NCBI RefSeq assembly: GCF_018977255.1
Contig: NW_024704755.1
Span: 7,812,001 to 7,876,000, forward strand
Direction of reading: 5' to 3'
Length of the DNA stretch: 64,000 nt
Source: Callorhinchus milii
Taxonomy: Eukaryota
Below the pieces are notes generated by a model. The model searched no databases. It was given only the letters and a program-made list of their open reading frames with translations, and was not told the origin of the DNA. The translations under genes and the position numbers were made by a program. Shown in pieces: positions 29,001 through 58,569 of the stretch. Positions within the stretch are counted from its first letter, which is position 1. Each line of letters starts with the position of its first letter.

Positions 29001-29016
29001 TAGACTTCACAAACCT

Positions 29017-29047
<31 letters not shown>

Positions 29048-32000
29048 GAAAGGAAAAAGAATTTTAATTTCTGTAAAAAATCCTACTAGATTTTTTTGGT
29101 TGAGTATAGTACTTGCACTGTATAGATAAGAGGCATCTCAAAGTTAAGTCAATAAGTTTCCCTCCCACCCATATATATTCCACCCAAGCCAAGTAAGAGA
29201 ATAGCTATTTGGGTATCCAAATAGTGGCCATCTGGCACAAATTCTAAACAGCAGCCTGCTCAGTACAAAATGCCAACTACTATGCGAGTGAACAAAGCTT
29301 CTGAATACTACTTACAATTTGGTATAGCGCTTTTCGTATCAGGAAGACATCTTAAAAGCACTTCACAGGATTTAATGTAAAGTGGAAGTGAATAAAAGAA
29401 TTTTATTGGGCGATTGCTCGCCAAGACACCGGGAGAAACTCCCTTCGCTTGAAATGCGTCCACTGGAGGGGTTCAGTTTATAAGACTTGAAATGGCTGGT
29501 CTTCATGGGAGAAGAAGAAAGTGACCAGCTATGTTTAGTCTTATGTAGAAGACTTTTCTTAAAAGAAATGGGTGGAGTATTAGATCAGGATTATCAGTCT
29601 TCCCACTTAAAGCCAGTAGAAATCCATAGTCTGGATTGTAAAATGGTTATCACTACAACAGATTTCTACAAGTATACAAAGATTTTATTTGAGTATTTAC
29701 CTCCATTAGCCAGTCTAGAAGAATAGCCCTCATTTTAGGTTGCAAGAGTGGATGTTTCTGCAAAACATCTTTGTCTCGTAGATATGTTTGATCTTTCTTC
29801 ACAAGATTATTCCAAACTTCATCTCGATTTGCCCAGCTGTTAAAACAAAAGGGCACAGATTAATCATTGAACACAACCAAAAGCAACTGTTCCCAGCCTC
29901 CACTCAGTTTGAGACCTACAACATTGAAGCAAACCCAGTGCATTTTGAGAACAGATGAATGTAGACTTACCCCAATATTGGTAATGGTGAAGCTCTAGTT
30001 GGTGTGACAAAGACATTTTTGAATCTGTACTGCACACAACTGTCAGTATTCAATGTAGCCACACCATCTGGATGTTTTTGGGGTGTTGGAATGAGCCTAC
30101 ATGGACTTGTACAGTTGGGATCAGTATTCCAGCAAGCCTGAAATTAATAAATTGGATACAAGCTGTTTACTACTATATTTGTGGTTTGGGGCAAGAATAA
30201 GAATGAAAAATGCACTTGTGTCTAACTCCCCCCATATTTTCATAAAGCTTACTACTTTGGTAAACTTGAAATGGCAACATGGGACAGAGAGAACATTTCA
30301 CCCACTCCCTGGGATTGTTACCCTCAAGAAATCCCACTGGAGGAAAAAAAACACGTCAAGTGATTATTTAGGGCAAGGCAGTAACCCAACTATTCAAGAG
30401 GGAACTCTGCAACCAGAATTCTCTGCATCTTGTCAACCTCCCTCATTTATATTCTCAATCATTTCTCCACTCATCCACCAATGCAGGAACATTTTCTTAA
30501 TTGCAGCCATGCTTGACCTCCAATTTATTTCCACCAATAGCTAATTCTACTATCCTCAGTCACCTGCAGTGCATTTTAGGACTCCACCCTCCACCCCCTC
30601 TTCATATCCATGCTTCCCATTGATGACATCTGCAAACATGGGAGTTAATTTCCACGTTACACAAAATGACACCCAAAACTACCTTTCTTCCTCCCTGGAT
30701 TCCTTGACATTCTGACTTCCTGTCTCAGAATTAAGCCTCACTGTTTTTCAGTTAATGGATAATCCAAAGCCATCTTCCATAACTCCTGCCAACATCTTCA
30801 TGCTCTGAATTCAACTTACTCAATCTTTCCAACTCAATGAACCTTCAGTTCAAACCCTAATGACTAATCTTCACCATCTACTTCTCACCTGTACTAAATG
30901 CTACATGCCCATCACCCTCACCAACCAATGTTGAAGGTTCTCACCCATAAATCCCTTCATACCTTTGTACCTTCCAATTTCTGATCTTCTGTTAGCTCTA
31001 TCTACTCAACTAGGTCTCTCTCCTGCATGTGTACACTATGAATGGGAAGGTCCCGGGGAGTGAGTAAGTAGGGTTCCCTTGCTGCTGAGGTGGCTCCACA
31101 GCAACATACTGGCCAACAGAATATCTGATTGACTCAACCCTCTCTGGTGGTCTCAATAATCCAGGTCCTGAGTGAGGTGGGTCTGACATCAAACCTTTTA
31201 AATGCTGAAAACCCACCACACTCAGGACTTGAATTATTGAGACCACCAGAGAGGGTTGAGTCGATCTGACATTCTGTTGGCCAATTTGGCTCAATTTTAG
31301 GAACTGGAGGGACAGATCAGTCACAGGGATTCTTCCCACTCAGCTCCTAATGGGGCCTTTAAGCCAAGGCCCCATTAGGTAAGATAGCCCAAGTTGCACT
31401 CATTCATAAATTGTGAGATTTTAGCTGGTTAAATAGCACTATCCCAACATGTTAAGGTCCCCAAGCTTGGCTCTTGTCAACCAGTGCCAAATGCTCTCAG
31501 AACTAGATAAGCATGGTGTGTCTCTTCAGGGAGAGTGCACATTTCTACTGCAGACACAGGGAAATGTGGGAACTGACTGATTTAGAAACTTAAAGAAACA
31601 TAAAGCACAGTGGTTTCCACATGGGTCGGACATCCATCTTGCCAAACTATGATGAAACCCATCAATATTGCAAACATTATATTATATCAACATTTGCAAT
31701 TTTGATACCCAGTTAACCAACTCCACATTTTCAAAAAATATCTTGATTGAGTTACAGAAAGTGAAGTTACCTGTGTGTCGAATGTTTTCTTTGTTTGCGC
31801 TTCTGTAACTTCATCAAAGTCCTGTAAACACTTGGGATAGAATATATTTATTACTAAATCTAGTATTGGAGTAGTAGGAAAAATAGTATGTGGGGGGAGA
31901 GGGGGGGGGGGAAGGGAGAGGGGGGGAGAAGAGAAGAGACAAACTCACAATGGCTACATCTGCTTTTCGCTTTCTGGATCGTAATAGTAGCCCTTTATTT

Positions 32001-41442: not shown

Positions 41443-44140
41443 AACTTCAGCACTTATTGTTGTAGCATATAACCCAATGTAATCCATTTCAAGTGATGAA
41501 CAGACTTAGCACCAGTGTTAGTGTGGGCACAGATTTTCACTTAATGCTTATGAGGTTCTGAATTTTGATGCTTTGATGTGATGTGATTGTTCTTTTAACT
41601 TAAACTATAATGTATGTAAGCAGTGTATATAATTCTCATATTTGTACTTAAAGACTGCTTTTGATCAGACACAATGAGTTGGATTAAATGCTGATACCTA
41701 AGAGTCAAAGGTATAAGTATAAATCGTGAAACTGTATGTAGCCAATCCAACAATTGAACAGTTGATGTAAATAATTATCACCCGATCTATGATGTGATTT
41801 ATTGCATTTAGAAAGCTAAAAAAAAATTTGCCCTCAATAAAGAAGTCATACCCTTAAGAAACTGGTTTTATCATTCAGGTAAGAATGTAATGTACCCATC
41901 AACCCCTCCCCTGCTTAAACTGCAAGCAGTTGTACAATTCATTTTGTTTAAGAGCTGCCATGATTATGCACTGCTGATGCTGACCTCGATTCACCTGCTG
42001 TATATCACAGTAAAATCTCCGTAGTAATATATTCTTGCATTTGATATAGCGCCTTATCACATCTTCGAGACATCTCAAAGCGCTTCACAGAATATACTGA
42101 GCTTGATATTTTGAAAGTGAATTGACTATATTTTGTGGGCGAAACATCAAGCTCATAAATCACAAAGGTTTTGAACGGTTCCATCATCAATTAAGCACTG
42201 AAAGACAACTTTCTGTTTGCATATAAATTTTATTTAGTCAATTACCAAACTTTTACAAGAATAACAATCAACTTTATTTTTACATCTCTTGTCAATTTTT
42301 ATATTTTAACTTGCATCAGTAAGATCTAGTGAAACAGTGCCTCTTTAAAATGTTTGTCAAGAATCAATCTCTCCCACTTATTTTATGGCACAGCATGCAC
42401 ACCTATTATAAAGTATGCAACTACATGAATGAAGTCCCAGCTGCTCTTTGTAAAATAGAACTGTTTTTTATATTTTGAAACTGGCCCATTCAAGTAAGTT
42501 TAAAAACATTGTAACAGTTGAAGGCTTTTTTTGTTTACATTTTACAAACTAAAGTTTACAAATAATTACAGGCAACAAAATGGCCCGTCTACTCAGTATC
42601 TATTTTACTGCATTTACTTTGTCAACTCTTCACTTTGTTAAACCATCTTCTGAAGCTAGTCATTACTTCTGGATGTAGTGTGTTGAGCACTGATAGCTCT
42701 CTAGCACCTCAGCCAAGTGGCTATTATGTGGGAGCCTCGTCAGTGAGTGTTTAGTCATTAAAGATATAACAACAAAGTCTGCTCTTGTCCCCACTTAGTA
42801 CGTGCACATCTATTACGGATAGCAATTGATATTGAGCGTCTTAAGTGATTTTTGCTCCTTTTTCAGTCCAGAGATGTTAAGGTCCCGCTGCTGCTCTGGT
42901 TGAGATGGGCTCGGCAATGCCTGGCAATTTGAATGCAGGCCCTTCCTGAGCTATGTGGCTCTGCATAACAGGAAACATTTTTTTCTTTGACAGGAGGTAG
43001 GTTAATAGATTTTTGTCAGTGACTTACTAGGTCATTACAATTTCTGACATTTTGTCAGTAGCGGAAAATATAACAGGTGCTGAGTTTGTGATTGCGCAAC
43101 TTAATACTGCTAGACAGAAAATTAACAATGTTCTTTTTAATGCTTGGCTCATCACCTTTTTTTAATTAATTACTTTGTGTCACTGAAACGCCAACAAAAC
43201 AAACAACATCTGAAAAGTACTATCTACTGCATGAAAAACTAGTCTTGTCTCCCCCATGACATTATTTGGCAAGATAAATTGATAATGTTAATATTACAGT
43301 AATATAGCTATTAACAGTTTTATTATTGTAATGTTGATTGTTTGCGACATTACAAGCTTGAATGTACATAAAATAGGAGAACAGAGAGCCTGGCTTGAGT
43401 CAACCAAACAATGATGGACTTTGTTGGACAAAATAGTCTTGTTTCTAAAATGTATGTTGTTATACGTACTCTGGAGCTGCTTGCAGTCTAAGAGTTAATA
43501 ATCACAACAATTGCATGTTTAATACTCTAGTTGGAAGTATATCCCTGGAGCAATAATGGTTGTTATAATGTGGCACACACACACATCCTGACCATCTGTA
43601 AATACCTGGAATTCTTAATGCATATAGTACCTTTGTGGCTCTCGGCAGGCAACAGTACAGTTGGTTCCACAGGGAACAGGTTATCATAAATAGTACAATT
43701 TTAGCTGCACTAAAGTTCCTAAGGTTACTGATGCATTCCTCTGAAACCATGTTTAAGGTTACTGCAGAGGTTGCCACCTTCAGTCAAGTTTTCATTGCAT
43801 GAGGTCTCGCTTTGCACAACTTTATAATGCCATGTCTCAAATTAACATGTAATGTTAGTTTAGAAGCAAATACAGATTTTGTACTGTTAGTATTGAGTAA
43901 ATATACAGGTTTTAGCATAGAGATACTACAACCCTAAATGCCATTGAGTATGACAAATGGAGGTTGATGTCATTATTTTATACTGTATGACTTTGAAAAG
44001 TATACTAAATAAGCTTTGCTCTACCGACAGTATTCTATAATCTAAAAGAGTTTAAAAACTTTAAGCCAAGTTACTTAACACTCCGAATTTACCACTGCAA
44101 TTCAATACATTGTTATGTAGGCAGTCTCCTATTCCCTGAT

Positions 44141-47100
44141 TTAATATTTATGATTGCGCTGACAGGGTTGTTTGAAATGTCCAAAGTGCTTTTCCTTGGC
44201 AAAATAGCGTTTTCTCGCTCTGTTTTGCCTGCGAAGGTGATTGCAGCTCAGTTTTCGCCTCTCTACATATAATTTGGCACATTGCATGAAATGGATATGA
44301 CTGGTATGTTCGAGAACACTATCCCGAATCCTGAAAGCAGACACTCTTCGTGGGACATACTGCACAATCGGAATGACCCTGGATAGAAAAAAAATAACAT
44401 TTAACTTGCCACTTGTTTTACTATGTCAAATGTTAATACTTTGAAGTGAAGTACTATTGATTATAGCACTCTAGGGTACTAACATACACTGCTCAAGACA
44501 CTGACATACTTTCTCTGCAATGGACACACCGATCACTTACAAATGTTCTTTATAATTCCCAAAGGTAGTTTGACAGTAAAAGAGTCCCATTTATTAAAGT
44601 ACAGTCTTGCTTGCTTTTTTGTTTATGCAAACAATTTATTAGATATCTATAAGTCACTTCTTCTGTCTCTGTATTGGAATGAGTTATACTCTTGAAATGT
44701 GATATTAAGAAACATTTATTGTTGAAACATTCTAGTTCTCTTAGATATTCTCCATAAAGACATGATGAAATTCCCTGTAATGTTAACATATTCACAACAT
44801 TTCAACATTTGAAAGTGTGCTTACCTTTCAAAGTAGCCTTGTAAAATATCAGATTATTTAAGTGCTTTAAAATACCTGACATTGTTCATGGTCTTAAAAT
44901 AATAGTAATAGCACAGTCCAAATATGCTTCATGAAAGTTGATAGCATTCATTTGATGAACGTGAGTAATAAATAATAGTAAAAATATGCTCAAAACACAT
45001 AACTTTTTAAACCATGGTTGTATTCACTTCAAAGGAATACTTGTTCTGATTATACTATCATGGAAAAGAAGCAAGCGTCAGCTAGCGTATTTATAAATCT
45101 CGATGCTGGAGACCAAGGATATTACAATGTTGCACAACAGATGTCACTTTTGTAGCCCAGAAGGCAAACCATTGTCGTCTGCTGTCAGAACTGTGAGTAA
45201 TTTAAAATTACCTTTGGGTTATAATGAATTGCCTGGAGCAAGAGAATATTGTTATACACAGTTATTCATGTCTCAAGAACCAACAGAATAGATATAATAA
45301 TGTCAACAAGGGCCTAAGCATGAAAACTAATTTAACTGTGTGCCACACTCAACTTCTCAGTTTTTCTCGAGATGTAAGATGCACAACACTAGTGGCAGTG
45401 AAGAAGAGATGTGAGCTGTGAGGAATCGGTTTAATGGGAGAACTCTTAAGAAAACAATAAGTACAACTTAATACAGCTATACCAGCTTATAAAGCAGGAC
45501 CCAAGGAGAACGCATGGCCAGCTTCCCACATCACTACGGAAGCAGGAAGCGACATTGGCGGTAAACTAATGGCTTGGAAATCATCCATTTTTAGTGCAGG
45601 GAGTTAGCTTTCTGTGCATATGAACAATGCAGAAGTATTGTACCAAGTTATAAGGCTGGTTGCGATTTTATTGACCCCAAGCTGACACATTGTCATGAGG
45701 CTCTACTGTAATTGTAATATAAGTGCATATTCGAATGGAAAGATTAAACTTAAAAACAATCTAAAATTATATTACACACTTGGGAGTTTGCCCCTCCTCC
45801 TCCGCTGCAGATTCTTCTTCACTGTCCTTGTTTTTGTTTTCCAGGGAGTACACAGACATGCTCGGGTGTTCAATTAGGAGATTTTCCAGGGGATCAGTTG
45901 GTACATTCACCACTGGTTGTTGGCCTGTAATAAAGCAAGACTTTGAGATTAGCCACTAAGTTAAACACAAGGTAAACTGTCTTCTTTGTCATGTATCACT
46001 GCAGATTTATATCAGTTTGCAGATTCTGTTAGAAATTCTGCTTCTGTGCTAAAATGTCAAATGGACAAATGTATGTTGGAAATTGGTTACTTCCCTCAGA
46101 ATATTGAATGTTTTGTGTAGACAATGGTAATAAATTCTGATAATCTACAGAGTCTTATGTTTCTTAATATGCTAATATAATTAATATTATATTCGAATTT
46201 ATACAACATAATTTATATAGGGTCTTTCACATCGGGGTACACCTCACTCCTATGGCATTTCTAACAACATTTTAAAAAGTCTTTAGTCTGGTGTAAAGAA
46301 TATTTTACAAAATTATGATAGGCCATGATGCAAAATTGTCATTGCTGATGGAAGGATAGCAAGGGAGTAGACAGACTAAGACAGAAACTGGCAAACAACC
46401 CCAAAAAAGAGAATCTAAAAATTAAGTATAAATTGAAACCGGAAAGGTGGAAGGAGTATTATCGTCATTTCACAATTTATAAATTAATCAACACAGCCAT
46501 TAAAGTTGCAAATCACATATCTCATATTGGAATTTAAAGGTGTAGAGCTGGGATATTTATTTAAATATTTATTGAATCAAAATTCTAGATTACGAGTCTG
46601 GAAATATTACCATTTCGGTTAAGTGAGTCATATATCTTACTGTGGCCTAGTTCAGGGTTTAAACCTAAATCAGGTCAAAATTACAAGTCTTGCGTTGCTG
46701 CAGGATTTGTAGTTCTTTTCAGATATTTCCATATGAGCAGAAAAGAACTACAGTTTCCACAATACATAGCTTTCAACATTAACCGTACTCCTCCTGGTGG
46801 CGTGTTTAGATCAGACTGTCCCTGTAATAGCTGCTGACTCCTCATTTTTCCTAATCTAGATGTCTTAAAATGGTGTAAGATTGATACCTTACAGCCTGCA
46901 GTTCTGGCATTTGTATCAACCCGTTGCTTCTGCAGTTTGGATTTAGTGGGAGAGGTTTTTCTATTGATGTCTTGCCACGAGAGTTTAATTTGTTTCCGCT
47001 GTACTGCTCGGTTCAGTTTGAGTTGCTTTGCTAAATTTTCAGCATAAAGTTTGCACAATGATGCAGCAAAAACTTGGTCAAAATTCTTCAACAAAGAACT

Positions 47101-48000
47101 AATTCTTATGAGAGAATCTTACAACTGAAACCATGCCAATATATACTTTGGTTTCGCAGTTTAGTACTGAGCCATACAGAGGATCGCAGATGTGACTGTA
47201 ACTGCTTGTTGTATTAAAACAACTTTGATGTACATTTGAAATTAAAATAAAGACAAACAAAGGGACAATGAAATGAAAGCCAAAAATAAAACGTTTCATA
47301 TCACCAAGGTCAGAATCAAATAATTTATTTCTATTGGGAATGTTTCATTTTGCCAGATCTCTATATCAGTGCAACCTCAACTCCACTACAAAAAGCCATT
47401 CTACAAGCTGGAATATATACTTAGCCTTTGTGGTAAACTTCTTAGGGGTCACTTTGACTAAGAGCTTAAGAGGATAGCTAATACCTATTACTCTCAGCTT
47501 TGAGGTAACACCCATATGCTTTTGGCAATGTATAAAGAACACAAAATAATATTAAAATACTGTTCAAATTAAATGAGGTACAGCTCAACCTAATCTCATA
47601 ACATTTCAAACTGCTGCCTGGGTAAGTCTCGGAAATATTGTTATAGTTTGTATTTACAACACTAGGCCAGTGAAGATTTACAAAAACCACAGTGGGGACT
47701 TAGTGAATAAATCATTTATCTCATATCATAATGCACTCATAACTTATTCATAGTTAAATAAATATTGTTTCTATCAGGTCCCTGTGAGGGATTGCACAGG
47801 TACATCTTAGCTGAGATCACCTGTGCAAATCCTTTGCATACAAAACATATTACACAAACACCTTAAAAAGTACCTTGGATATCTACAATAATCCAGTCAT
47901 CTTCTTCACTCTCATACAGCATGTGGTTCAAATCACTGATGCTTTCTTTGCTGTCTTCATACGTCTCATTGAGAAAGAAACTGGCGAGTTTTCCCAGCAT
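44141..48000 (-). CDS. TP53INP1/TP53INP2 (DOR)-family protein, 169 aa, 3 coding exons
   Basis: Exon 48000-47874 MLGKLASFFLNETYEDSKESISDLNHMLYESEEDDWIIVDIQ (acidic LIR W-I-I-V); exon 45924-45780 GQQPVVNVPTDPLENLLIEHPSMSVYSLE...; exon 44378-44141 ...ERRKLSCNHLRRQNRARKRY...KQPCQRNHKY*. Lengths 127+145+238 nt, phases 1 and 2 are compatible, and there is an in-frame upstream stop. ENLLIEHPSMSVY and LRRQN...QPCxR are family signatures. Confidence 0.9.
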
Positions 48001-49989
48001 GATGGACAAATGTACACAATGCCTTGTATCGGGTCTCCACTGTAATTTGCTTCCAACAAAGGTTTACTGTCAGCCAGTATTGTTACCTTTATTCCTATTA
48101 AAACATATATAGAATCCAAGTTATGCATTATAAACCGGGAAACTGTACTGAAATCCTTGGCAGTTTAATTGCAGCTCTTGCATCTATCCCGGCAAAGACC
48201 TGATTACTTCAAACCAGCAACCTAAAATTTTTAAATATAGAATGTTTTAAACCATCAGAATTCAAAAATATCAAACGCTGATCTTTAGTTGGCTGCAAAT
48301 CTTCATTATCCTCTAATGGGATTTAAAAAATATACCACAAAGCTTACAGGAAAGGATAGAAAGGATGATCTGAAAAGATGAAGGAAATCCATCATTAATC
48401 AGCTATGAAATCCATTCAGACAATTTAAGAAAGAGGATTTTATTGGTGATGATTATTTACAATCGATCATGTTACTGGTGTAAAACCTTTTGCACCAATT
48501 TCTACCACATCACTAATTATCCAGAGCTAGATTCCTCTTGGAGTATTTCAACGCCAGTACCACATGGCTCTTAAGCAGACAGGTGTACTGAAAAACTTCT
48601 CAGTAAGAGTTTGGATCAGTATTACCCATCCTCACGAATGGAGTATTATAGAATCTTTATTGCACAAATGGAGGACATTCAGCTCATTGTAATGTTTGCT
48701 GGCTCCTTGTGGCCCACTGGAGCTATCCAGTCTAATCCCATTCCTTGTAGGATATCAAAGGCATATATTCTGAATGCCTTCTAAAAATAAGAAATGTGCA
48801 CTGGCTATTAATGCAATATTAAAGGAAATGTTCAGCTTTATGTACTTAATTTTTTAGTGCGAGTTTGATTGTCTCATAGAATTATACAGCATAGAACGAG
48901 GCTATTCGGCCCATCGTGTCCGCACCAGCCCTTGTAAAAAGAGCTATCCAAATCAATCCCACTCCCCCGCGCTCTCCTCACAGCCCTGCAAACTCGTCCT
49001 CCCCCAAAATAATGATCTACTCAGAGAAACGGAATCTCTTTTTGAATCACGCCATGGGATCTTTAATATCCACCCGAACAAGCAGATGGGACCTGGATTT
49101 AACATCTAATCTGAAGACCCAACGAGTGACTTGAACACACGACTTAAAAGTACAAACAACCTGAAGCGCTCTTGCTTAATCTGAGCTGCCGTGTTTCGAA
49201 GGCGAGATCGAAACCGAAGTCTTGTCTTGTGGACACGAACTATCCCGTGCATTGTCCATAAAGGGAAGGAAGTTTCTTCCAGTGTGTAGACCAACAATCC
49301 TTGTGATTAAAAACAGTGCCACAGCTATTTGTGGGGCTTTCCTGTCTGCAGGCTGTTGCATTTGCTCACCAAAATAGTTCCCACGCTTGATACCAAATTG
49401 CCTGCGAAATACTTTTGGGGCATCTTTACGTGATAAAAGACTCTCTCTCTCTCTCTCTCTCTCTCTCAAAATAAGGCTAAAAGTCTTCTTAATTTAGAGG
49501 CAATCATTTCCTGCCCAAACATCCCATAACATTTTGCCTGAATTAAGTGGCAATGTTGCAACACGTCACGTAATGTTTACAGATCAATTGCACGACTTCG
49601 TTGTGTGTGTATATATAGATATATATAGATACATATAGATATAAAAAATTCTTTCGGTGGCCTAAGATTAATGCTATTTAAAAGTGATACAAGACACACA
49701 CACAACAACAACAACAACAAAAATATGTTGTGACTCCTGCGCTGTGGATGTATCGTCGGCGGTGTATCCGATTTCACAGCGGAGGGGAAAACGAGACATC
49801 AGCTGTTCAGACTGTATTCTGACTGTACTCTCTTAAAATATGACCTTCATCTCTCTCTCCCCACAAAAAGAACACTCCCCTTCCCCAATTCCACCCGAAT
49901 ACCCCAAATGACAGCCACCGATCCTCCTTTCCCCACAAAATGACTTTCCCCGAACTTGGACGACACTTTGGCTGAACTTGTCCCACCAC

Positions 49990-50440
49990 TTTGAACCAAC
50001 CCACACACACACACACCCACACCCCCACCCACACCCCCCAAACCCCCCCACCCACACCCCTCCACCCACCCACATCGCCCCCATCCACACACACCCCAAA
50101 CCCACCCACACACCCCCCTCCCACCCCCCAAACCACCCACCCCCCAAACTACCCACCCCCACCCACACATCCCCACCCCCCCACCCACACCCCCCAAACC
50201 ACCCCCCCACCCCCACACACCCCCAAACCACCCACACCCCACCCACACCCCCCAAACCCCCACCACCACACCCCCACCACACACACCCCAAACCCACCCA
50301 CCCCCCCACACACCCCCCCCCCCACCCCCCCAAACCACCCCCCCCACCCACACACACCCCAAACCACCCACCCCCAAACCACACACCCCCACCCCCACAC
50401 CCCCCACCCCCACACACACCCCCCAAACCACACCCCACAA
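49990..50440. repeat. C/A-rich low-complexity tract (G/T-rich on the minus strand)
   Basis: ~450 bp almost entirely C and A (CCCCCCAAACCACCC and CACACACCCC units). Confidence 0.9.
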
Positions 50441-50482
50441 ATAGTGGCAAATAAAACTCTCGCAATCCAAACTCTTTCTCAC

Positions 50483-51130
50483 CGATCAGTGGGGGTCGGG
50501 TCGGGGCTCTCAGGACGTGTGGAAATCTTGAGACAAAAACTAAAACTAAAGTTCAATCTCAGGGACGTGGGTTTTGCAGAGACCGAACAATTCCCTCCGA
50601 CAACAAAAGTCCTCAGTTTTACCGGTTTTTTTTTTTTTTTGAACGTTTTTCTCAGTCGTCGGCGAAGCGGAGTTATCGATCTCTACGAAAGCTTCTGGGA
50701 AACGCGCTGTTCGATCTTCTTCTGGTCGCGAGTTAAACTGCTCCGCAGACTTGTGGTTGCGCTTCTGGTTTGATCAGCTGTTTGCGGAATCGCCAATGTC
50801 TGTCTGTCTGTCTGTCTGTCTCCTCCTCTGAGAGGCACAGCCCCCCCCCCCCCCCCACCCACCACCCCCACCCACACCCCCAAAAAATAAAAGCATCGGA
50901 AGTTCATCTGTAGGTTATCTTCAAGTTGATCCGTGGCTCCGAGCTGACCTCTACCGTGCGGACGAAAGATGTCGTGTCCCGGGGCGAGGCACTTCAAGGC
51001 GGCTCGTAATCCCTTCAAGAATCAATCAATCAATCAATCAATCAATAATAATAATGATGATAATTTGGTCGTTCGGTCCACCACGAGTGAGACGCTGCTG
51101 TGCGCAAATTGGCTGCTTGGTTTCGCCCAC
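50483..51130. promoter_or_regulatory. CpG island, probable bidirectional promoter for the TP53INP-like gene (-) and C19orf12 copy A (+)
   Basis: CpG-rich; minus-strand donor CG|GTGAGA at 50483/50482 could splice to the acceptor at 48221; plus-strand donor-like CGA|GTGAGA near 51086. Confidence 0.65.
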
Positions 51131-51319
51131 AAAATGCACAGTCAATTCACTTTGCAGTATTTTCCGTGAAGCGCTTTCAGACATCTCAAGATCATGATTA
51201 AAAGGCTGTATCAAATGCAAGGATTATTATTATTACTAAGCGGTGAATATTTACCATTTAAGGCTGTAATTAGGTTCAATGAATAAACCATTTATTTCCT
51301 TGAACATTGTATTGGAAAG

Positions 51320-51416: not shown

Positions 51417-52778
51417 GAGAATCATATTGTCCAAAATAACCCAAAAGTACAAAGTACAGTAACAGTGCACCTGATATTTAAAATGCTGTTATCAGAAATG
51501 ATTAGTTCAGTTTCTTTTTGAAACTGAAACCACTCAGGATGTTTTGAGACAGCTGGAACCATCAGTTTAACAAAGGTAGCTCTTTATTCATTTTCCTTGT
51601 CAATTTTGGCGTAAAATATGTCGTTCTTAGAGTCAAATCTGTTGATGCCAGAGAAAGAAATTTTGGATGTGGGCAGAGAAAGATCAGGGAATTGGGATTG
51701 GAGTAGATCATGTGGAGGAGCTGTAACTAGTACAGGTTAAGTACTTCAATGCTCTCTACACTCTTGGGTCAACCATAGCAAGAGTAGATGTGGCGTAAAA
51801 CTGCATCATCCAAAACTAGCATTGTGCTTAAATAGCAACCTCACAAGAATACTCCTTTGTATTTTAGCAATACTATAGCCATTGCTGACTTAGACTTCCC
51901 TTTTATACCTCCCAAGCTTTAAATACATTTTTTCCCCTTTTTCTTTTATCCTCACTGTGTTGAAATAAAATTCATTGTCTGTGTGCTTTATTTTCGGTCT
52001 CAAAACTTCAAGATTGGAACTTCTTATTTCCCTCAAACTTCCCTTCCTCCTGCAGGCTTTTAAACTACAAACTTGGTGTAGCTTAGTTTCTTTGGCCAGT
52101 GCTGGAGCCTTCTTAAACTTTAAATTTAGTTCTGATAAGACAACTCTTGGGTAAACAAACCAAGATTTTCAATGTCAGCTCCTTAGTTTTGTTTAATATT
52201 AAATACCATTTGGATACTGGTTTGTTGGAACTCTGTATATATGTAAGCAGATGTTTCAGTAGCCTTGTTGCTTGGGATCTCAATACTGCCTCAATTGAGT
52301 AAAGAAATAAGAAAGTACAGCAAAATGAAGTTCTAAATCAAGCAGATTGATAGCAGGAATGTATCTAATTACTCCAGGTATAAATATCTTAAAGCAATAA
52401 TTAGTTTGGTAGCCATGGTATGATAGAAATCCTTTTTGTTAAGGGAGGATAAACTGGAAAATCTGATTCATATTCCCATCAGAACTGATGATGCAAAATG
52501 AAACCAACATTGAAACCAGCAAATTATGCAATAGTCTCTCCCTACGTGTTTTTCAAGTTGAAAGTGTACAATTGATTTACTTCACTGTCTGGTCTGTATT
52601 TCTATCTATTGTGGAAGAACTCTTTTTTAAAAAACAGGCAGAATTGGTTTCTCGTGCTGCTGCTGCTACAATATTGTAATTTAAAGTTTAAGAAGTCTTT
52701 AGTACTGAACAAATAATACAACTTGTTATAACTGACAAGAACGTATGTGATTTTTCAGGATCCTACAGCTAGCCAAAG

Positions 52779-53981
52779 ATGCCTGTGGATGTCAATGAAA
52801 TCCTTCACTTAGTGTGTCACATTTCAAAGGTGAAGAAGATTCATGTTGCTGTAAAAAGTTCTGGGAAGGGAGCAATTGTAGCTGGTGCCTGCGCATTTTT
52901 TGGTGGCCTGCTTGGTGGACCATTTGGCATAGCAGCTGGTAAGTAATGTTTAATTATTCTTGTAAAAGTGTCAATTTTATTACAGTGATATCTACAGTGA
53001 TATAAGCAGGAAATAGGAAAATTATAGTGGCAGTATTGCTGAGACTTACCAGTATATAAGCATTGTCTAACACCCAGTGTCTTGGGAACCACTGATCTCT
53101 TTCTGTGCTGTAAAATTCTCAGATTCTGATTCTATGATTTTTTCAATCTCTGTCTGAAAGACTTTGAATTTTACTGTTGTGATTCACTGATTTTGCTTCA
53201 TTCTTGTCAGGTCACTGAGAGCTGTTTGTTTTTGAGGTGTTTCATCTGACTCGAGAGATTGACAGAAATCAAATGTAAAATTTCCTGTAGCAAGTTTAGC
53301 TGAATGATGGTTGTCTGTACTTTCATTTCAAAACCAAAGTTAACAGCCATAGTCAGCCGTACTGCCTTATGAATCTCTAGATTACATTTGAATCAATATT
53401 CATGTTAGAGAGTCATATTTTGCTTTGCTAATGGGTTATCTGGACTTGAGCTACAGATCAACCATGATCTTATAAAATTGTGGTACAGGCTCGAGGGGCT
53501 GAATAGCCTACTCCTGTTTCTATGTTTCTATCAAGATCATTTATAAAAAGCTAAATCCAAAATATTCAATAATAATTACAATCTTTGATGGAGTGTCTTA
53601 TCATGGTCCTTGAGACGTCTCAAAGCTCTTCACGGAATACACTGTAAAGTGAATTGACTGCATATTTTGTGGGCGATACAAAATTGAGTCTCGAAATATA
53701 TTTGTTCTTCCCCAGGTGGTGCAGTTGGTGGATTGGTGGGTGCCTGGATGACCAGTGGACAGTTTAAACCATTGCCTCAGATTCTTATGGAACTGCCACC
53801 AAACCAACAGAGGATGCTATCTGCTGAGGTGCACAAGATTATCAAACATTTGGATTGGACTGATGCAGTACATCTCGTAGCGTTAGTGATGAGAAATCCT
53901 TCCCTGACTCAGTTGGTGCTTCAGACAGCATTAAACTTCTTCTCACAGCAGTTTGATGCTCAGATAAAATATGAAGATTGA
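52779..53981 (+). CDS. C19orf12: C19orf12 homolog, copy A (141 aa)
   Basis: Exon 52779-52938 MPVDVNEILHLVCHISKVKKIHVAVKSSGKGAIVAGACAFFGGLLGGPFGIAAG; exon 53716-53981 GAVGGLVGAWMTSGQFKPLPQILMELPP...LDWTDAVHL...AQIKYED*. Glycine-zipper transmembrane region; 160+266 nt. Confidence 0.93.
53445..53530 (+). mobile_element. CR1/HER1-type LINE (or HE1 SINE) 3' tail
   Basis: CAGATCAACCATGATCTTAT...GGCTCGAGGGGCTGAATAGCCTACTCCTGTTTCTATG; related tails at 8755-8820 (+) and 48876-49000 (-). Confidence 0.6.
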
Positions 53982-54649
53982 CATCTTTATGCCGAGTGTT
54001 TCTTTCAAATCATTTGTCTGAAACAAAATCCATAAACTACCTTTTGAGTTCTATAACTATGTGTATATTAACAATGTATTTGCATGACATCACTAGACAC
54101 ACAATAATAACTGATGATTGGGAGTATGTTGGATGCAGGACAGGTGATTTTCTGTCACCTAATGGAGCCACCTTATACTGGAAGCATTTTCAGTCAATGT
54201 AGACAGTCAGTGCTCCAATATAATACAGTGGAGGGGTCATGTTTCCAGTCTAATTTATCATTTTTGCACTAATAGCAGCCTTGCATCCTCTCTTAGTGAA
54301 ATTGCCAGATGGGGATTTCAGATCCAAATTGTAGGTATCTACATAACAACAACGACAAAATGACATGTGTATAGTGCCTTTCACGTCGGCAGATCATACT
54401 GTGCAATATGTAATTCTGAATATACTCTGCATTGTACCAAAACCTGAAACGCACTTTTTTAAGGGGGTGGGGGGGGGGGGGGACCAGACACAATATCACA
54501 AATCTCCCTGATCTAACATGTCTGTGCTTCAGTTTGACATGCATTGACACCGTGCACATGAGAGGGAAGACTAGTTTTGCAGTCGAACAAAAAAATACAG
54601 CAAATACAGTATAATCTAAATTGAAAAAAAAAGCAGCAGCAGCAGAGAG

Positions 54650-54788
54650 TGGTTTCTGTCGTGTGATGGTGCGCTTTGCAATTACGCTTTCGACATAAAC
54701 TCCACTCGAACCTCTCAGGTTTCTCTGTCTCTCACGGTGTAGTTGGTTATATATCTATATATATATACACACACATACCTACACATGC

Positions 54789-54821
<33 letters not shown>

Positions 54822-55300
54822 CAAAGGGAGGGGTGTGATGGGGATGTGGCGTTTCGGGGAAAGTCTACTCGGCAGCGATTGGAGAGGAAAAAGAAAGTCA
54901 GGAGAAAAACACGCGATAGCGAGTGCGCCTTCACTGACACAGCTGTGCGGGCGGTGCGGTGGATCACTGCAGCTGCAGTGCTGTAGTCCGGAACCAGAGG
55001 CAGCACCGACCAAAGTCCTTCTACCCTGAGCTCAGCAGCCTCGGGCGGTGCAGCCTTACACCAGGTACCCCCCCCCCCCCACCCCCCCACCCCCCCACAC
55101 ACACACACCCCACACACACACACACCCCAGAGAGAGAGAGAGAGAGAAAGCCTGAAAGCACTTCAGTCGCGATCATGTTATTTTCCACCCCCCACAGTGT
55201 CGTATGTTACACGAGTGTGTGTGTGTCTGTGTGTGTGTGTGTGTGTGACCAGTCCTGCACTGGAATGAGCTTTGCAATGGTAACGGTAGGATCCGGGCTG
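54650..55300 (+). promoter_or_regulatory. Small CpG-rich region, probable promoter/non-coding exon 1 of C19orf12 copy B
   Basis: Local CpG enrichment, donor-like CAG|GTACC near 55064, microsatellite flanks; lies upstream of the acceptor at ~56965. Confidence 0.55.
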
Positions 55301-56035
55301 ATTTAATGGAGGAAAAGGCAGGCGGGGGGTGGGGGGTGGGAGCTCACTCTGAGAATGTGAATGAGAGGGGGTTGCAAATGAGAGAGGCCTTTCTGTCTGT
55401 CTGTCTGTGTCTGTCTGTCTGTGTCTGTCTGTGTCTGTCTGCTCGATGTGTTGCTGCTGTTTTGAGGCTATAAACTGGAGGAATGGTGCAGATGTTTGGC
55501 TGATTCGGTTTCACTCGAGGCTGAGCGTTTGGATTCGGTTTGGAGTGTCTTCTGCTTTTAAAGGGACACACAGTGGCCTTCCCAGGTGCTGACTGAGCCC
55601 TTTCCTTGTCTATTTGCCAAACACACACACACACACACACACAAGCGATGGCAGTGATATTGGAAAAGCTCCATTGTTTCTGTGGAGCCATGTCCATTAC
55701 ATCATGCAGACAAAAAATAGCACATGTCTATGTCTCTTCCCTCTATCCTCATTGATGGTGAAATGGATACTTTTTCGTCGCTTGGTTTACAAAGTGTTTT
55801 CTACTGATTATTGCATTTTTTTTAAATAAAACCTTTTTTGCATTTTAAAAGACGGATTTATTAAACACCATGGTCCCTTAGTAAATTATGTGTGTGTGTG
55901 TGTGTGTGTTTAGCAAATAGAAAAGGCTGGAATAATTTGCAAAAGTCAAAGGGAGTTCAGAATTGTGCCTTTTGGCAAAAGCTGACAAAATACATAGTCA
56001 TTACATATTACAATAAACCCTGTGAATTGTAATAT

Positions 56036-56790
56036 GTCCTGCAGCTGAATGTGGACAAGATGGAAGCCATACTCTTTGGCTCCCGTCAACGTCTTCACTC
56101 CTGCGGATCTAAATTCGTCAACCTCCCTGGGCTCCCCCTCAGATTCACCGAACCAGTGCACAATCTAGGCGTCTGGTTTGACCCCCAGTTGTCTTTCCTC
56201 CCCCACATCTGGTCCCTGAACAGGACCGCCTTCCTCCACCTCCGCCATATTGCTTGCCTCCGACCATACCTTACCCCAAATGTAGCCGAAACCCTTGTGT
56301 ATGCATTTGTCACATCCCGCCTGGATTACTCAAACTCACTCCTCACTAGTCTCCCCAGCTCCACTATTCAAAAAAATCCAGCTCATTCAGAACTCTGCTG
56401 CCCGCACATTGACCCGGATCAAACTCTGTACCCACATCCCCAGAGTTCTGGCCCAGGCTTCACTGGCTTCCCATCACCGAACAGATCGACTTCAAGATCC
56501 TCACACTCGTGTTCAAATCCCTTCACTCCCTGGCACCTCTCTGACCTCCTCAGCCCCCAATCCACCACCCGGCGCCTCCGCTCGACTGGCACCGGCCTCC
56601 GGCTTGTTCCTCGCAACCTCTGCTCCACCATTGGAGGTCACAGTCTCAGCCACTACTCCCCAAAACAGTAGAACACTCTCGCTCAATCCCTCCGCCTTGC
56701 CACCTCTCTCCCCTTTCTCAAGTCCCGCCTGAAAACCTTCCTTTTCGATGCTACCCTGCATGGTGGGCGTTATATAAGCGCAAGTTCTTG
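56036..56790 (+). mobile_element. L2-clade LINE 3' fragment, diverged subfamily
   Basis: NLGVWFDPQLSF, AFVTSRLDYSNSLL, LHWLP, DFKIL motifs with frameshifts. Confidence 0.85.
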
Positions 56791-56985
56791 TAGTTGTGCA
56801 GTGCTTCGATACATGAAAGCTGCAATATCAAATGCAAGAATTATTATTGTAGGCAAAAAGAAACCTGAAAGGGGGAGAAAAGTGAATACATTGATGCCAT
56901 ACAGTATAACGATAATAGCAATCTGCTTGCAATGATGGAAGTGATGAACATGTGTGTGATTACAGGATCCTTTCGCTCACCGAAG

Positions 56986-58569
56986 ATGCCTGTGTATCCC
57001 AATGACGTGATGCACTTGGTGAATCATCTTTCACAGGTGGAGAAGATACAGGTTGCAGTGAAAGGGTCTGCAAAGGGAGCAGCTGTGGCTTGCATAACAG
57101 CGTTTGCTGGCGGGCTGTTCGGTGGGCCTCCCGGAATTGCAGTTGGTGAGTGTTTGGACCCCGGTTCAAAGGGACAAAAAAAACATTTGACAAACCCCTG
57201 TATTAGTTAAAAAACAATCACGTGACACAGAGTGCTCTTGGGCCTAGTCTTGGTGTTCACAAAGATATTGTAGGTAGAATCCATAAAAAAGACAAAGTGT
57301 GTGTCGCCCTATATGTAAATCAGACATGGAATTAGGGCCATTCAATGGCTATTGTGACTATTCAATGATGGTGAAAAGGGACAGATCTGAGAGTTTTTAC
57401 ATCACACAATGATAAGCGTACCTGGATCCTTTTAAAAAAGGACAGTAGTCAAATTCATTGTGTTGTCTTACTATTCCGCAGTAAATAATATGAGCATATA
57501 GAGAGCTTTCAGACACTTTGTCCCCTGCTCTCTGAAACTCCTCAAATGCCTCCATCTCATACCTACCCTCTCAGCATTCCAAGCCCTTCTAAATATCTAC
57601 CTCATTGACAGTGCCTTTGGTCACCTTCCTCATATCTGACTGTGCCTTAATTCGTCTCACTCCTCCCTTCTATCTCCTTCCTTGCTCGGGCTCCCACTCA
57701 GTTTCTGTGAAGTGTTTTGAGCATTATCCCGTGTCAACAATTCTATAAAAGCAAGTTGTTTATCCGTGTCATACTCTACTGGGTGGGACCCACGTATACC
57801 AGAAAGGTCTCGGGTTTAATTGTTTGTTTGTTTAAGCACTCCCAAGATGCTACCCTGGAAGAAGGGCACCATATAAATGCAAATTAGGATGTTGTTTATG
57901 GCAACATAACTAACCTCAGCCACTTTGAGACCAGGGTCACAGTAATTGGCCTCAGGGTTTGGGATAGAAAAAAACAGCTTCATATCCTGCCTCTGATGAT
58001 TACCCTCTGACCCCTGGTGGAATGTGATTGTCAGGAGAAAATCAGATCAAGCTTCTCAGCTGTGATATGCTCTGAATTGCCTGTTGATACTTGTTGCCCA
58101 GCCTCATACATTGCCTGGTTCTGATACATTACCCAATCTCGTACATAAAGTGTAGCCTCGCAGCGAGAGACCAGACAGTTCCTTACCTCACACACTAGCA
58201 AGGAGCATTACCTTCAGGATAGGCATGAGGAAGCTTGAGAATAAAATCAATGTTAACTATTCATTTTAAATTTGAAAAAAAATGTCTGTTTGCCCCTCCT
58301 CAGGTGGTGCGGTTGGTGGATTGCTGGGTGCCTGGATGACCAGTGGACAGTTTAAACCATTGCCTCAGATTCTTATGGAACTGCCACCAAACCAACAGCA
58401 GATGCTTTTGACCGATGTGCAAAATGTTGTCCGGCACCTGGACTGGACTGACGCAGCACAGCTCATCGCATTAGTGATGGGAAATCCCACACTAAAGATC
58501 CGGGTGCTACAAGCAATCAAATTGTTTTTTCTAAACCAACTCAATGCCGAAGTGCGATATCCAGAGTGA
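56986..58569 (+). CDS. C19orf12: C19orf12 homolog, copy B (141 aa)
   Basis: Exon 56986-57145 MPVYPNDVMHLVNHLSQVEKIQVAVKGSAKGAAVACITAFAGGLFGGPPGIAVG; exon 58304-58569 GAVGGLLGAWMTSGQFKPLPQILMELPP...LDWTDAAQL...AEVRYPE*. Same exon sizes as copy A. Confidence 0.93.
57500..57760 (+). mobile_element. Decayed L2 3' end
   Basis: GCTTTCAG...CTCTGAAACTCCCTC...GTGCCTTTGGTCACC...GTGAAGTGTTTTGAG pattern. Confidence 0.5.

What the first reader, a model, noticed from the sequence alone, without database searches (positions are those of the whole stretch)
44141..50800. Intact third TP53INP/DOR-family autophagy adaptor beside CCNE1, a likely ohnolog of TP53INP1
Seen: three spliceable exons give a 169-aa ORF with an acidic LIR (EEDDWIIV), the ENLLIEHPSMSVY box and the C-terminal LRRQN...QPCQRNHKY motif. 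Known: mammals have only TP53INP1 and TP53INP2; TP53INP1 lies near CCNE2 and PLEKHF2 at 8q22, while the paralogous 19q12 block (CCNE1-C19orf12-PLEKHF1) has no TP53INP gene. Inference: this is the CCNE1-linked whole-genome-duplication copy, retained here and lost in mammals, i.e. a largely uncharacterised LC3/GABARAP-binding protein.
Basis: partly seen in the sequence, partly recalled or inferred. Interest (0 to 1): 0.85.

Follow-up and report, generated by a model that had tools for sequence, protein, structure and literature searches.

The report
Third TP53INP gene beside cyclin E1
The elephant shark carries an expressed third member of the TP53INP/DOR autophagy-regulator family next to cyclin E1, an ancient fish gene that land vertebrates seem to have lost and that papers on this family do not mention.

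Summary
On the minus strand, three coding exons (48000-47874, 45924-45780, 44378-44141) with GT..AG introns give 169 aa. Exons 2 and 3 hit Pfam DOR. Both junctions appear in contigs of 4 of 4 runs from two studies. The product equals RefSeq XP_007887581.2 of Callorhinchus milii, named "si:ch211-260e23.9 isoform X1", so the gene is already annotated.

C. milii also has TP53INP1 and TP53INP2 on other contigs. A tree of 70 proteins gives three clades: third 100/100, INP1 99/95, INP2 95/95. Each holds cartilaginous and bony fishes, so all three genes predate jawed vertebrates. Of the 120 best relatives, 117 are fish members of the third clade. The only 3 from a lungfish or tetrapods are TP53INP2 isoforms.

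The gene lies between cyclin E1 and two C19orf12 copies. It keeps the acidic LIR, the PLENLLIEHPSMSVY helix and a basic C-terminus, but lacks the SWF[VI]TPPPCF segment. It is a fixed "short form".

Whole-genome-duplication origin is likely but not shown, and the sister clade is unresolved. LC3/GABARAP binding is inferred. Papers describe two vertebrate genes only.

The parts
50483..50731 (-). Non-coding first exon (5'UTR). Its 3' end is at 50483 (CG|GTGAGA donor). Its 5' end is at least 50731, and the true start was not mapped.
   Evidence: A loose end at 48095 in 4 of 4 runs. A 17-base piece of its letters maps once, at 50491-50507 (0 expected by chance). The donor was read. The X4 contig of 616 letters has 249 letters beyond exon 1.
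47874..48094 (-). Exon carrying the start codon. The acceptor AG is at 48096-48095, the ATG at 48000, and the coding part is 48000-47874 (42 codons plus 1 base).
   Evidence: contigs lie on 47873-48095, with the joint to exon 2.
47881..47913 (-). Region 1: the acidic LC3-interacting region ESEEDDWIIVD (residues 30-40). The core W36-I-I-V39 fits both the LIR and the GABARAP-interaction-motif consensus.
   Evidence: W36 and E30 are invariant in 29 third-clade proteins. The motif definitions come from passages of PMC5538626 and PMC3314686.
45780..45924 (-). Coding exon 2 (145 bases), entered in phase 1 and left in phase 2.
   Evidence: Pfam DOR E 1.2e-13. Both flanking joints are in 4 of 4 runs.
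45848..45892 (-). PLENLLIEHPSMSVY (residues 54-68), the helical half of family 'region 2'.
   Evidence: E56, L59 and P63 invariant. LLIEHPSMSVY is present in 128 of 153 third-clade proteins in hand.
44141..44378 (-). Coding part of exon 3 (78 codons plus TAA at 44143-44141). The exon continues as 3'UTR.
   Evidence: Pfam DOR E 1.5e-5. Contigs run from 44378 down past 43600.
44207..44302 (-). Basic C-terminal helix, residues 117-148 (...KLYVERRKLSCNHLRRQNRARKR...), aligned with the NLS-bearing part of TP53INP1/2.
   Evidence: It is the only long helix in the AlphaFold2 model (that stretch has pLDDT about 66-69, the whole model a mean of 54.6). Alignment. The NLS role is inferred from passages of PMC12752491.
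44144..44170 (-). The last nine residues, QPCQRNHKY. They occupy the position of the 9-aa cytoplasmic retention motif of TP53INP1/2. The clade's commonest form is QPCQRLYNY, and the chimaera form is derived.
   Evidence: Motif role from passages of PMC12752491.
43600..44140 (-). 3'UTR, shown down to the edge of the laid stretch. One contig of 2269 letters has 1490 more letters beyond 43600, so the UTR may reach about 42110 if it is collinear with the genome.
   Evidence: table 8 (records 1 and 9). No AATAAA was seen near 42110, so the end is not fixed.
42951..42960 (-). Start of an alternative last exon (acceptor tgttatgcag|). Joined to exon 2 it reads K-A-T-stop, which is RefSeq isoform X2 of 93 aa, lacking the whole C-terminal half.
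   Evidence: A loose end at 45780 in X4 and X5 maps at 42939-42960 with 1 mismatch. Sequence. P0023 ends ...GQTPKAT.
26008..32000 (-). Neighbour: cyclin E1 coding exons (approximate span).
   Evidence: Exon-like open frames. Cyclin_N hits with E 1e-8 and 8.8e-16. All 10 listed PDB matches for each of two exons are human cyclin E1, with E about 1e-18. The PDB copy showed no cyclin E2 to compare, so 'E1' also leans on the C19orf12 linkage.
52773..58566 (+). Neighbour: two tandem C19orf12 copies (52773-52943 with 53688-53978, and 56869-57207 with 58276-58566), head-to-head with the third TP53INP gene.
   Evidence: Pfam C19orf12 PF20721 on all four pieces, E from 2.8e-10 to 1.2e-23.

Best explanation
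This is the elephant-shark (Callorhinchus milii) orthologue of the fish gene now labelled si:ch211-260e23.9. It is a third, ancient member of the TP53INP/DOR family, called T3 here.

Shown:
- It is an intact, spliced, expressed gene of four exons, three of them coding, encoding 169 aa.
- T3 forms its own clade beside TP53INP1 and TP53INP2. Each clade holds cartilaginous and bony fishes, so the three genes already existed in the last common ancestor of jawed vertebrates.
- In this window T3 lies between cyclin E1 and C19orf12.

Inferred, likely:
- The triplet arose in the early vertebrate genome duplications. T3 travelled with CCNE1, as TP53INP1 did with CCNE2.
- T3 was later lost on the lineage to tetrapods.

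Inferred from motifs:
- The protein is an intrinsically disordered ATG8-binding adaptor.
- Its acidic W-I-I-V motif docks on LC3/GABARAP proteins.
- The PLENLLIEHPSMSVY helix cooperates in autophagy and co-activator functions, as in DOR.
- The basic helix and the C-terminal nonapeptide set nuclear versus cytoplasmic location.

Anatomy: T3 lacks the SWF[VI]TPPPCF segment of the long TP53INP1/2 forms. Its phase-1 intron 1 sits where DOR has its optional internal splice. T3 therefore corresponds to a permanently 'short-isoform' family member.
For: - Gene model and motifs.
- Family: Pfam DOR on exons 2 and 3.
- Identity with RefSeq XP_007887581.2 and the names of its orthologues.
- Splicing: both coding joints in 4 of 4 runs from 2 studies, plus a 5'UTR exon and an alternative 3' exon.
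- Separate C. milii TP53INP2 and TP53INP1.
- Trees: T3 100/100, INP1 99/95, INP2 95/95 over 225 columns. The same three groups appear with 161 shared columns: 100, 95, 95 SH-aLRT. Within T3 the branching is chimaeras plus elasmobranchs against coelacanth plus ray-finned fishes.
- Distribution: 117 of the 120 listed relatives are fish T3. The other 3 (lungfish, caecilian, turtle) are TP53INP2 short isoforms.
- Linkage: Cyclin_N and cyclin E1 matches, and two C19orf12 copies.
- Motif conservation: W36 invariant in 29 T3 proteins. SWF[VI]TPPPCF is in 0 of 153 T3 proteins.
- Intron phase: the DOR internal splice is phase 1 (passage of PMC3314686), as is intron 1 here.
- Disorder: mean pLDDT 54.6, with one helix at 117-148.
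Against: - No outgroup sequence was in hand, so the root and the sister of T3 are unknown. A midpoint root groups INP1 with INP2, which does not favour a special tie to TP53INP1.
- Human gene order and orientation are recalled. Passages of PMC10729861 only place NDUFAF6, INTS8, TP53INP1 and CCNE2 together at 8q22.1.
- The runs are 'RNA' by the tool's guess, and contigs cannot give strand or expression level.
- Absence from tetrapods rests on the best 120 of 392 hits from predicted proteins, not on genome searches.
- The chimaera C-terminus (QPCQRNHKY) departs from the clade's QPCQRLYNY, so the retention function may differ.
- A zero-spacer p53 response-element scan found nothing near the gene. 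There was 1 match in the window, at 17280, against 2.43 expected, so p53 inducibility is unsupported.
- No binding or localisation was tested.
Confidence: 0.8

Rival explanations
1. T3 is a translocated or fast-evolving orthologue of TP53INP1 or TP53INP2, not a third gene.
For: Sources often name clade members 'TP53INP1', 'TP53INP2' or '-like'. The length of 169 aa equals that of TP53INP2 short isoforms, for example P0184 at 169 aa.
Against: C. milii has a separate TP53INP1 (P0286) and TP53INP2 (P0184/6/7) on other contigs. T3 is split from both with 100/100 support and 100. Other species also carry all three, for example Chiloscyllium plagiosum (P0029, P0175, P0285) and Pristis pectinata (P0050, P0178, P0306).
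Confidence: 0.02
2. T3 is a real third paralogue but came from a small segmental duplication of a CCNE-TP53INP block before jawed vertebrates diverged, not from whole-genome duplication.
For: The tree only dates the split to before the chondrichthyan-osteichthyan divergence. Only a few linked genes were examined here.
Against: Recalled, not tested: the CCNE1 and CCNE2 neighbourhoods share further paralogue pairs such as PLEKHF1/PLEKHF2. TP53INP2 sits on a third chromosome region of the same paralogy group. That pattern fits genome duplication better than a local copy.
Confidence: 0.13
3. The gene is transcribed but decaying or non-functional in chimaeras, a relic on its way to loss.
For: The terminal nonapeptide is derived in the two chimaera sequences (QPCQRNHKY and QPCQRNYKY) compared with QPCQRLYNY in 72 of 153 clade members. 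A 93-aa isoform lacking the C-terminal half exists.
Against: The frame is open with canonical splice sites. Identity is 91% to a second chimaera-like protein, up to 61% to shark proteins and 49% to coelacanth (63% to Heptranchias and 48% to Latimeria by BLASTP). The invariant W36, E56, L59, P63, R141 and K160-Q161-P162 are all kept. The end branch is short, at 0.045.
Confidence: 0.05

Closest known systems
TP53INP2 / DOR, especially its short splice isoform
   Same: Same Pfam family. Both have an acidic LIR in region 1, the PLE[DN]LLIEHPSMSVY helix, an acidic tract, a basic C-terminal helix and a QPCQR.YNY-type end. The short isoforms (166-170 aa, for example P0184) have the same length and the same phase-1 junction position as T3 (passage of PMC3314686).
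   Different: T3 is a separate clade. Its short form is fixed, not optional: SWF[VI]TPPPCF is in 0 of 153 T3 proteins. The LIR core is W-[VI]-x-[VI], against W-L-I-[IV] in TP53INP2. It fits the GIM consensus in 97 of 130 T3 proteins against 0 of 124 INP2 proteins. T3 is one residue shorter before the QP of the C-terminal motif.
TP53INP1 (SIP/TEAP)
   Same: Same family. The LIR core W-I-L-V also fits the GIM pattern, in 78 of 88 proteins. Human TP53INP1 is placed at 8q22.1 with CCNE2 (passages of PMC10729861). That mirrors T3 beside CCNE1 here. The matching order and orientation are recalled, not tested.
   Different: TP53INP1 proteins are long (about 235-330 aa) and carry the insert. That set was fetched with the insert as query, so the count of 96 of 97 holds by construction. 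They form a separate clade. p53 inducibility defines TP53INP1, and no p53 element was found near T3.
Zebrafish si:ch211-260e23.9 and its RefSeq/Ensembl orthologue set
   Same: RefSeq gives the C. milii protein this very name. Shark, bichir, herring, salmonid and perch-like fish orthologues carry it too.
   Different: Nothing differs in kind, since this is the same gene family member. The clone-based name hides its identity, and many orthologues are labelled TP53INP1 or TP53INP2. The only paper in the library with this name lists it in a table of PFAS-responsive genes.

Membership tests
TP53INP/DOR family (Pfam PF14839) | Match to the family profile above the curated cut-off | tested here: met
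   Exon 2 scores 51.8 bits and exon 3 scores 25.4 bits, against a cut-off of 25. Exon 3 is only just above it. The full-length database twin P0001 carries PF14839 in the precomputed column.
TP53INP/DOR family (Pfam PF14839) | Region 1: acidic stretch followed by a W-x-x-[ILV] LC3-interacting motif | tested here: met
   ESEEDDWIIVD. W36 is invariant in 29 clade members. Definition from passages of PMC3314686 and PMC5538626.
TP53INP/DOR family (Pfam PF14839) | Region 2, helical half (PLE[DN]LLIEHPSMSVY) | tested here: met
   It is identical in the consensus of all three clades.
TP53INP/DOR family (Pfam PF14839) | Region 2, first half (ESWF[VI]TPPPCFTA) as in the long isoforms | tested here: not met
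   Absent from the product and from 0 of 153 clade proteins. The DOR short isoforms lack it too, so this does not exclude membership of the family.
TP53INP/DOR family (Pfam PF14839) | C-terminal NLS-type basic stretch plus conserved terminal nonapeptide (cytoplasmic retention motif) | tested here: inconclusive
   The basic helix is present. The end, QPCQRNHKY, shares 6 of 9 positions with the clade's commonest QPCQRLYNY. Its function cannot be read from sequence (PMC12752491 passages).
TP53INP/DOR family (Pfam PF14839) | Binding to LC3/GABARAP proteins and a positive effect on autophagy | not testable with these tools
   Needs pull-down or ITC and cell assays.
TP53INP1-type p53 target | p53 response element at the locus | tested here: inconclusive
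   The zero-spacer consensus with up to 2 mismatches gave 1 match in 64 kb, at 17280, against 2.43 expected by chance. None is near the gene. Spaced half-sites and distant elements were not scanned.
Vertebrate 2R ohnologue of TP53INP1/TP53INP2 | Distinct clade whose members span cartilaginous and bony vertebrates | tested here: met
Vertebrate 2R ohnologue of TP53INP1/TP53INP2 | Location in a paralogous chromosome block (CCNE1 block against CCNE2 block) | tested here: inconclusive
   The CCNE1 and C19orf12 linkage is shown here. The CCNE2 side rests on a human paper passage and on recall.
Vertebrate 2R ohnologue of TP53INP1/TP53INP2 | Duplication dated after the invertebrate chordates, with a single pro-orthologue outside vertebrates | not tested
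   No invertebrate or cyclostome sequence was obtained. PMC3314686 reports one gene in invertebrates (passages).

The most novel reading that the evidence does not exclude
After the vertebrate genome duplications, the two splice forms of the ancestral DOR gene were divided among the copies. TP53INP1 kept the long form only, TP53INP2 kept both, and T3 became a dedicated short form. The T3 W-[VI]-x-V motif makes it a GABARAP-preferring adaptor. Tetrapods could discard T3 because the TP53INP2 short isoform covers its role. A possible relic of the lost long-form segment (W-L-I-S-K-S-C-F-I-T-G) survives in frame at 45955-45925, just upstream of the exon 2 acceptor. Some published fish 'DOR' data, such as the salmon and trout clones that are only 28-29% identical to human DOR, may in fact describe T3.
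Probability: 0.25. Interest if true: 0.6.

Novelty: new member of a known kind. Interest (0 to 1): 0.45.

Why it matters
The papers I saw treat this as a two-gene family in vertebrates. PMC3314686 says so outright (passages). PMC12752491, from 2025, treats only TP53INP1 and TP53INP2 and cites Sancho for the duplication (passages).

A third gene as old as the other two is present in sharks, coelacanth and ray-finned fishes including zebrafish. This has three consequences.

- Fish knock-outs of tp53inp1 or tp53inp2 may be buffered by it.
- Sequences labelled TP53INP1, TP53INP2 or '-like' in fishes are partly mis-assigned. Sources use all of these labels inside the third clade.
- T3 is a natural 'short-form only' version of the protein. 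It offers a clean way to ask what the SWF[VI]TPPPCF segment does, and whether LIR subtype sets LC3 against GABARAP preference.

It is also one more ancient duplicate kept in the elephant shark that I did not find in tetrapods. It would not change how autophagy is understood in mammals.

Tried and rejected
- Exon 1 alone gives no family hit. The only match is DUF7939 at E 0.25, below its cut-off.
- The feature and structure look-alike search added nothing beyond DOR-family clusters. The Atlas's own model has pLDDT 0.52.
- AlphaFold2 on a 29-sequence alignment gave a low-confidence model (mean pLDDT 54.6, pTM 0.19), so I ran no fold search.
- Rfam found nothing in 41500-52000.
- The p53-element scan was negative.
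- P0013 was tried as a possible TP53INP1 seed. It proved to be crocodilian TP53INP2, 100% identical to P0219 and P0221 over 74 aa, and was dropped.
- P0010 (529 aa, repetitive) was a weak hit and was left out of all counts.
- URI1-like open frames at 466-744 and 1821-2186 gave no Pfam hit.
- Findings look-ups for TP53INP and CCNE2 met nothing. Others gave no related locus.
- No AATAAA was seen at the presumed 3' end near 42110.

Tree rows: 70 of the 380 proteins in hand were chosen by hand to span taxa. Left out were isoforms, fragments, most teleosts and most tetrapod TP53INP2.

Motif counts cover 379 of the 380 proteins, and the retrieval was biased. The TP53INP1 set was fetched with the insert as query. 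Most of the TP53INP2 set was fetched with a short isoform, and some came with the insert query. Only the T3 count of 0 of 153 is informative.

Searches behind 'not in print':
- 'TP53INP3' found 3 papers. In all three passages the term refers to human TP53INP1 or a human probe.
- 'ch211-260e23.9' found 1 paper, in a table of genes.
- 'inducible nuclear protein 1-like / 2-like' and 'tp53inp1-like / 2-like' found 2 papers. I did not read either occurrence: one is PMC3314686 itself and the other a honeybee paper.

Supplements of PMC3314686 (Table S1, Figure S1) were not seen. They would show which fish sequences that study used.

Full report
**What is in the sequence.**
The model lies on the minus strand.
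- An ATG at 48000 opens a coding stretch that ends at 47874 before AAG|GTA.
- Exon 2 follows an AG at 45926-45925, runs 45924-45780 and ends before GTGTGT.
- Exon 3 follows an AG at 44380-44379 and runs 44378-44141, with TAA at 44143-44141.

The pieces translate to:
- MLGKLASFFLNETYEDSKESISDLNHMLYESEEDDWIIVDIQ
- QQPVVNVPTDPLENLLIEHPSMSVYSLENKNKDSEEESAAEEEGQTP
- VIPIVQYVPRR...LRRQNRARKRYFAKEKHFGHFKQPCQRNHKY

Pfam was run exon by exon. DOR (PF14839) scored 51.8 bits on exon 2 and 25.4 bits on exon 3 against a cut-off of 25, and exon 1 gave nothing above cut-off.

**It is transcribed and spliced.**
Fourteen runs of one organism were listed for 44100-48100. I laid four of them (X1 and X2 of study P1, X4 and X5 of study P2) on 43600-49500. 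All are Logan contigs, and the kind 'RNA' is the tool's guess.
- Both joints, 44377/45779 and 45923/47873 (CT..AC on the plus strand, cut movable by 1), are present in 4 of 4 runs.
- Intron sequence is also covered, at lower depth, in some runs.
- A loose end at 48095 occurs in 4 of 4 runs. A 17-base piece of it maps once, at 50491-50507.
- There the sequence reads ...CTGATCG|GTGAGA. So a non-coding first exon ends at 50483 and is joined to an acceptor at 48096-48095.
- A second loose end at 45780 (X4, X5) maps at 42939-42960 with one mismatch. This is behind an acceptor, tgttatgcag|.
- Joined to exon 2 it reads K-A-T-stop. That is RefSeq isoform X2 of 93 aa (P0023).
- Contigs cannot show strand or level, so expression is shown only as presence of spliced forms.

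**Identity.**
HMMER with exon 3 alone against 1.84 billion representatives gave 22 proteins at E up to 0.001, 3 at up to 1e-10 and 1 at up to 1e-30.
- The best hit, P0001, is 169 aa and 99% identical.
- Its cluster holds XP_007887581.2, 'si:ch211-260e23.9 isoform X1 [Callorhinchus milii]' (P0024). [quoted passage not shown]
- P0024 has the same sequence as the window's product.
- P0001 differs by Ser115Asn. That is the 44301 C>T variant seen in run X2.

So the window is elephant shark, and the gene is already modelled in RefSeq.

**A third gene, not a displaced orthologue.**
Three searches gave the comparison set.
- With P0001 as query: 392 proteins at E up to 0.001 among 443 candidates, of which the best 120 were listed.
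- With a shark TP53INP2 short isoform (P0015): 790 of 1196 candidates, 120 listed. These include C. milii TP53INP2 (P0184 169 aa, P0186 239 aa, P0187 192 aa; contig of 15,161,263 bases).
- With residues 93-136 of P0186, the segment shared by long TP53INP1/2 forms: 1261 of 1274 candidates, 120 listed. These include C. milii TP53INP1 (P0286, 235 aa; contig of 125,603,275 bases).

The third gene lies on a contig of 18,121,395 bases.

I built a maximum-likelihood tree from 70 of the 380 proteins in hand, chosen by hand across taxa. It used 225 columns with IQ-TREE LG+C20+F+G4.
- Each label falls on one side of a branch: third clade 29 rows at 100/100, TP53INP1 18 rows at 99/95, TP53INP2 23 rows at 95/95.
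- Inside the third clade, chimaeras plus elasmobranchs (97/84) oppose coelacanth plus ray-finned fishes (96/88).
- The TP53INP2 clade holds chondrichthyans, coelacanth, lungfish and tetrapods. The TP53INP1 clade holds chondrichthyans, ray-finned fishes and one frog on a long branch.
- With only the 161 columns filled in at least 85% of rows, so without the insert, the three groups stay at 100, 95 and 95 SH-aLRT.
- No outgroup was in hand. A three-clade unrooted tree has a single shape, so it cannot say which clade is the sister of the third. The drawing's midpoint root groups TP53INP1 with TP53INP2.

**Distribution.**
- Of the 120 proteins listed, 117 are closest to third-clade references.
- All of the 117 that carry a source name are cartilaginous fishes, coelacanth or ray-finned fishes. 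One (P0162) also carries a second, ferret label in nr, which I take for a mislabel.
- The unnamed ones are at least 55% identical to a teleost reference.
- The other three are TP53INP2 short isoforms: Protopterus P0155, Rhinatrema P0160 and Pangshura P0161.
- No tetrapod or lungfish member was seen. This suggests loss on that lineage, but it rests on predicted proteins and on the listed part of the hits.

**Neighbours.**
- Minus-strand open frames between about 32000 and 26000 read as cyclin E. Two give Cyclin_N (E 1e-8 and 8.8e-16).
- Two further exons match only human cyclin E1 chains in the PDB: 10 of 10 listed for each, E about 1e-18.
- On the plus strand, two tandem C19orf12 copies lie at 52773-53978 and 56869-58566 (PF20721).
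- From recall, human 19q12 has C19orf12, then CCNE1, then URI1 with nothing of this family between. Human 8q22.1 has TP53INP1 directly upstream of CCNE2 in the same orientation.
- Passages of PMC10729861 place NDUFAF6, INTS8, TP53INP1 and CCNE2 together at 8q22.1.
- The parallel arrangement supports a block duplication.

**Anatomy of the protein.**
The alignment of the 70 proteins and a 29-member clade alignment show the following.
- Region 1, E-x-E-[ED]-G/D-x-W-[VI]-I-[VI], has W36 and E30 invariant.
- No third-clade protein has the segment of about 70 residues that ends in ESWF[VI]TPPPCFTA in long TP53INP1/2 forms (0 of 153).
- PLENLLIEHPSMSVY is conserved in all three clades.
- It is followed by an acidic tract and a basic stretch, RRKLS..L.RQN...KR.
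- The end is F-KQPCQR.YNY. Here it is QPCQRNHKY, and QPCQRNYKY in a second chimaera-like protein.
- Intron 1 is phase 1 and sits exactly where TP53INP2 short isoforms rejoin (P0184 against P0186). PMC3314686 states that the DOR internal splice is phase 1 (passage).
- The LIR core fits the GABARAP-interaction motif [W/F]-[V/I]-X-V (PMC5538626 passages) in 97 of 130 third-clade proteins. A few of the 130 are false regex catches.
- It fits in 78 of 88 TP53INP1 and 0 of 124 TP53INP2 proteins.
- AlphaFold2 with the clade alignment gives mean pLDDT 54.6 and pTM 0.19, with one long helix at 117-148. This is as expected for a disordered adaptor.

**Mechanism, by inference.**
Passages of PMC3314686 report the following.
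- Region 1 of DOR and TP53INP1 binds all six human LC3/GABARAP proteins tested, through the W and I/L positions. It overlaps an export signal.
- The acidic residues heading the region 2 helix are needed for nuclear exit, autophagosome formation and co-activator activity.

Passages of PMC12752491 map an NLS in the basic C-terminal part and a nine-residue cytoplasmic retention motif at the very end, in both TP53INP1 and TP53INP2.

The third gene keeps all four elements. The most likely working model is therefore a short-lived, disordered protein that sits in the nucleus in fed cells. Under stress it is held in the cytoplasm, where its LIR binds ATG8 proteins on forming autophagosomes. None of this was tested. 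The derived chimaera C-terminus may alter retention. A p53 element was not found near the gene.

**Known or new.**
The gene model exists in RefSeq and UniProt under a clone-based name or under the TP53INP1 or TP53INP2 labels.
- In the paper library, PMC3314686 states that vertebrates contain two genes and that the elephant fish has two (passages). PMC12752491 repeats the single-duplication account.
- Searches for a third member found only three slips in human contexts and one table entry. One further pair of hits I did not open.
- PMC3314686 used salmon and trout 'DOR' clones that are only 28-29% identical to human DOR. Whether those are third-clade genes cannot be told without its supplement, which I could not see.

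**Verdict.**
This is a real, expressed, ancient third family member linked to cyclin E1. It is annotated, but the papers I searched neither recognise nor study it. Interest is moderate. It corrects the two-gene picture of the family, explains the mixed naming in fishes and offers a natural short-form variant with a zebrafish orthologue to work on. It is, however, a further member of a known family, in a genome where this scan's first readers have flagged several other candidate extra duplicates (unchecked notes).

Noticed in passing
window 45925-45955 (minus strand): In frame with exon 2 and directly upstream of its acceptor, the intron reads W-L-I-S-K-S-C-F-I-T-G. tblastn aligns this to the WF[VI]TPPPCFTA block of C. 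milii TP53INP2 and TP53INP1. A TAG at 45958-45956 closes the frame upstream. It may be a relic of the lost long-form segment that now serves as the pyrimidine tract, or it may be chance.
   Followed up: partly
window 52773-53978 and 56869-58566 (plus strand): Two tandem C19orf12 copies of two coding pieces each, all with Pfam PF20721 hits. The first lies head-to-head with the third TP53INP gene, about 2 kb from its first exon.
   Followed up: partly
window 42951-42960 (minus strand): The stop codon of the 93-aa isoform (TAG in the window) reads AAG in the contigs of runs X4 and X5. In those animals the alternative exon would read on further.
   Followed up: no
window 44301: A C>T difference in run X2 changes Ser115 to Asn. 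It is the same variant as in UniRef V9LCA0 (P0001).
   Followed up: yes
window 48919-49115: Summed contig depth of 1341 and 3021 in runs X1 and X2, with many different loose ends on both sides. This is a dispersed repeat inside the 5' intron that is present in many transcripts. There was no Rfam match.
   Followed up: no
window 49999-50438: A CACCC-rich degenerate tandem array of about 440 bases in the same intron, next to the first exon. It produces the long low-complexity open frames.
   Followed up: no
I did not examine it. From recall, it is also missing from the human C19orf12-CCNE1 interval.
   Followed up: no
window 15420-16362, 34465-34950, 56033-56729: Open frames with reverse-transcriptase-like motifs, fragments of one kind of retroelement in three places. 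The third lies between the two C19orf12 copies.
   Followed up: no
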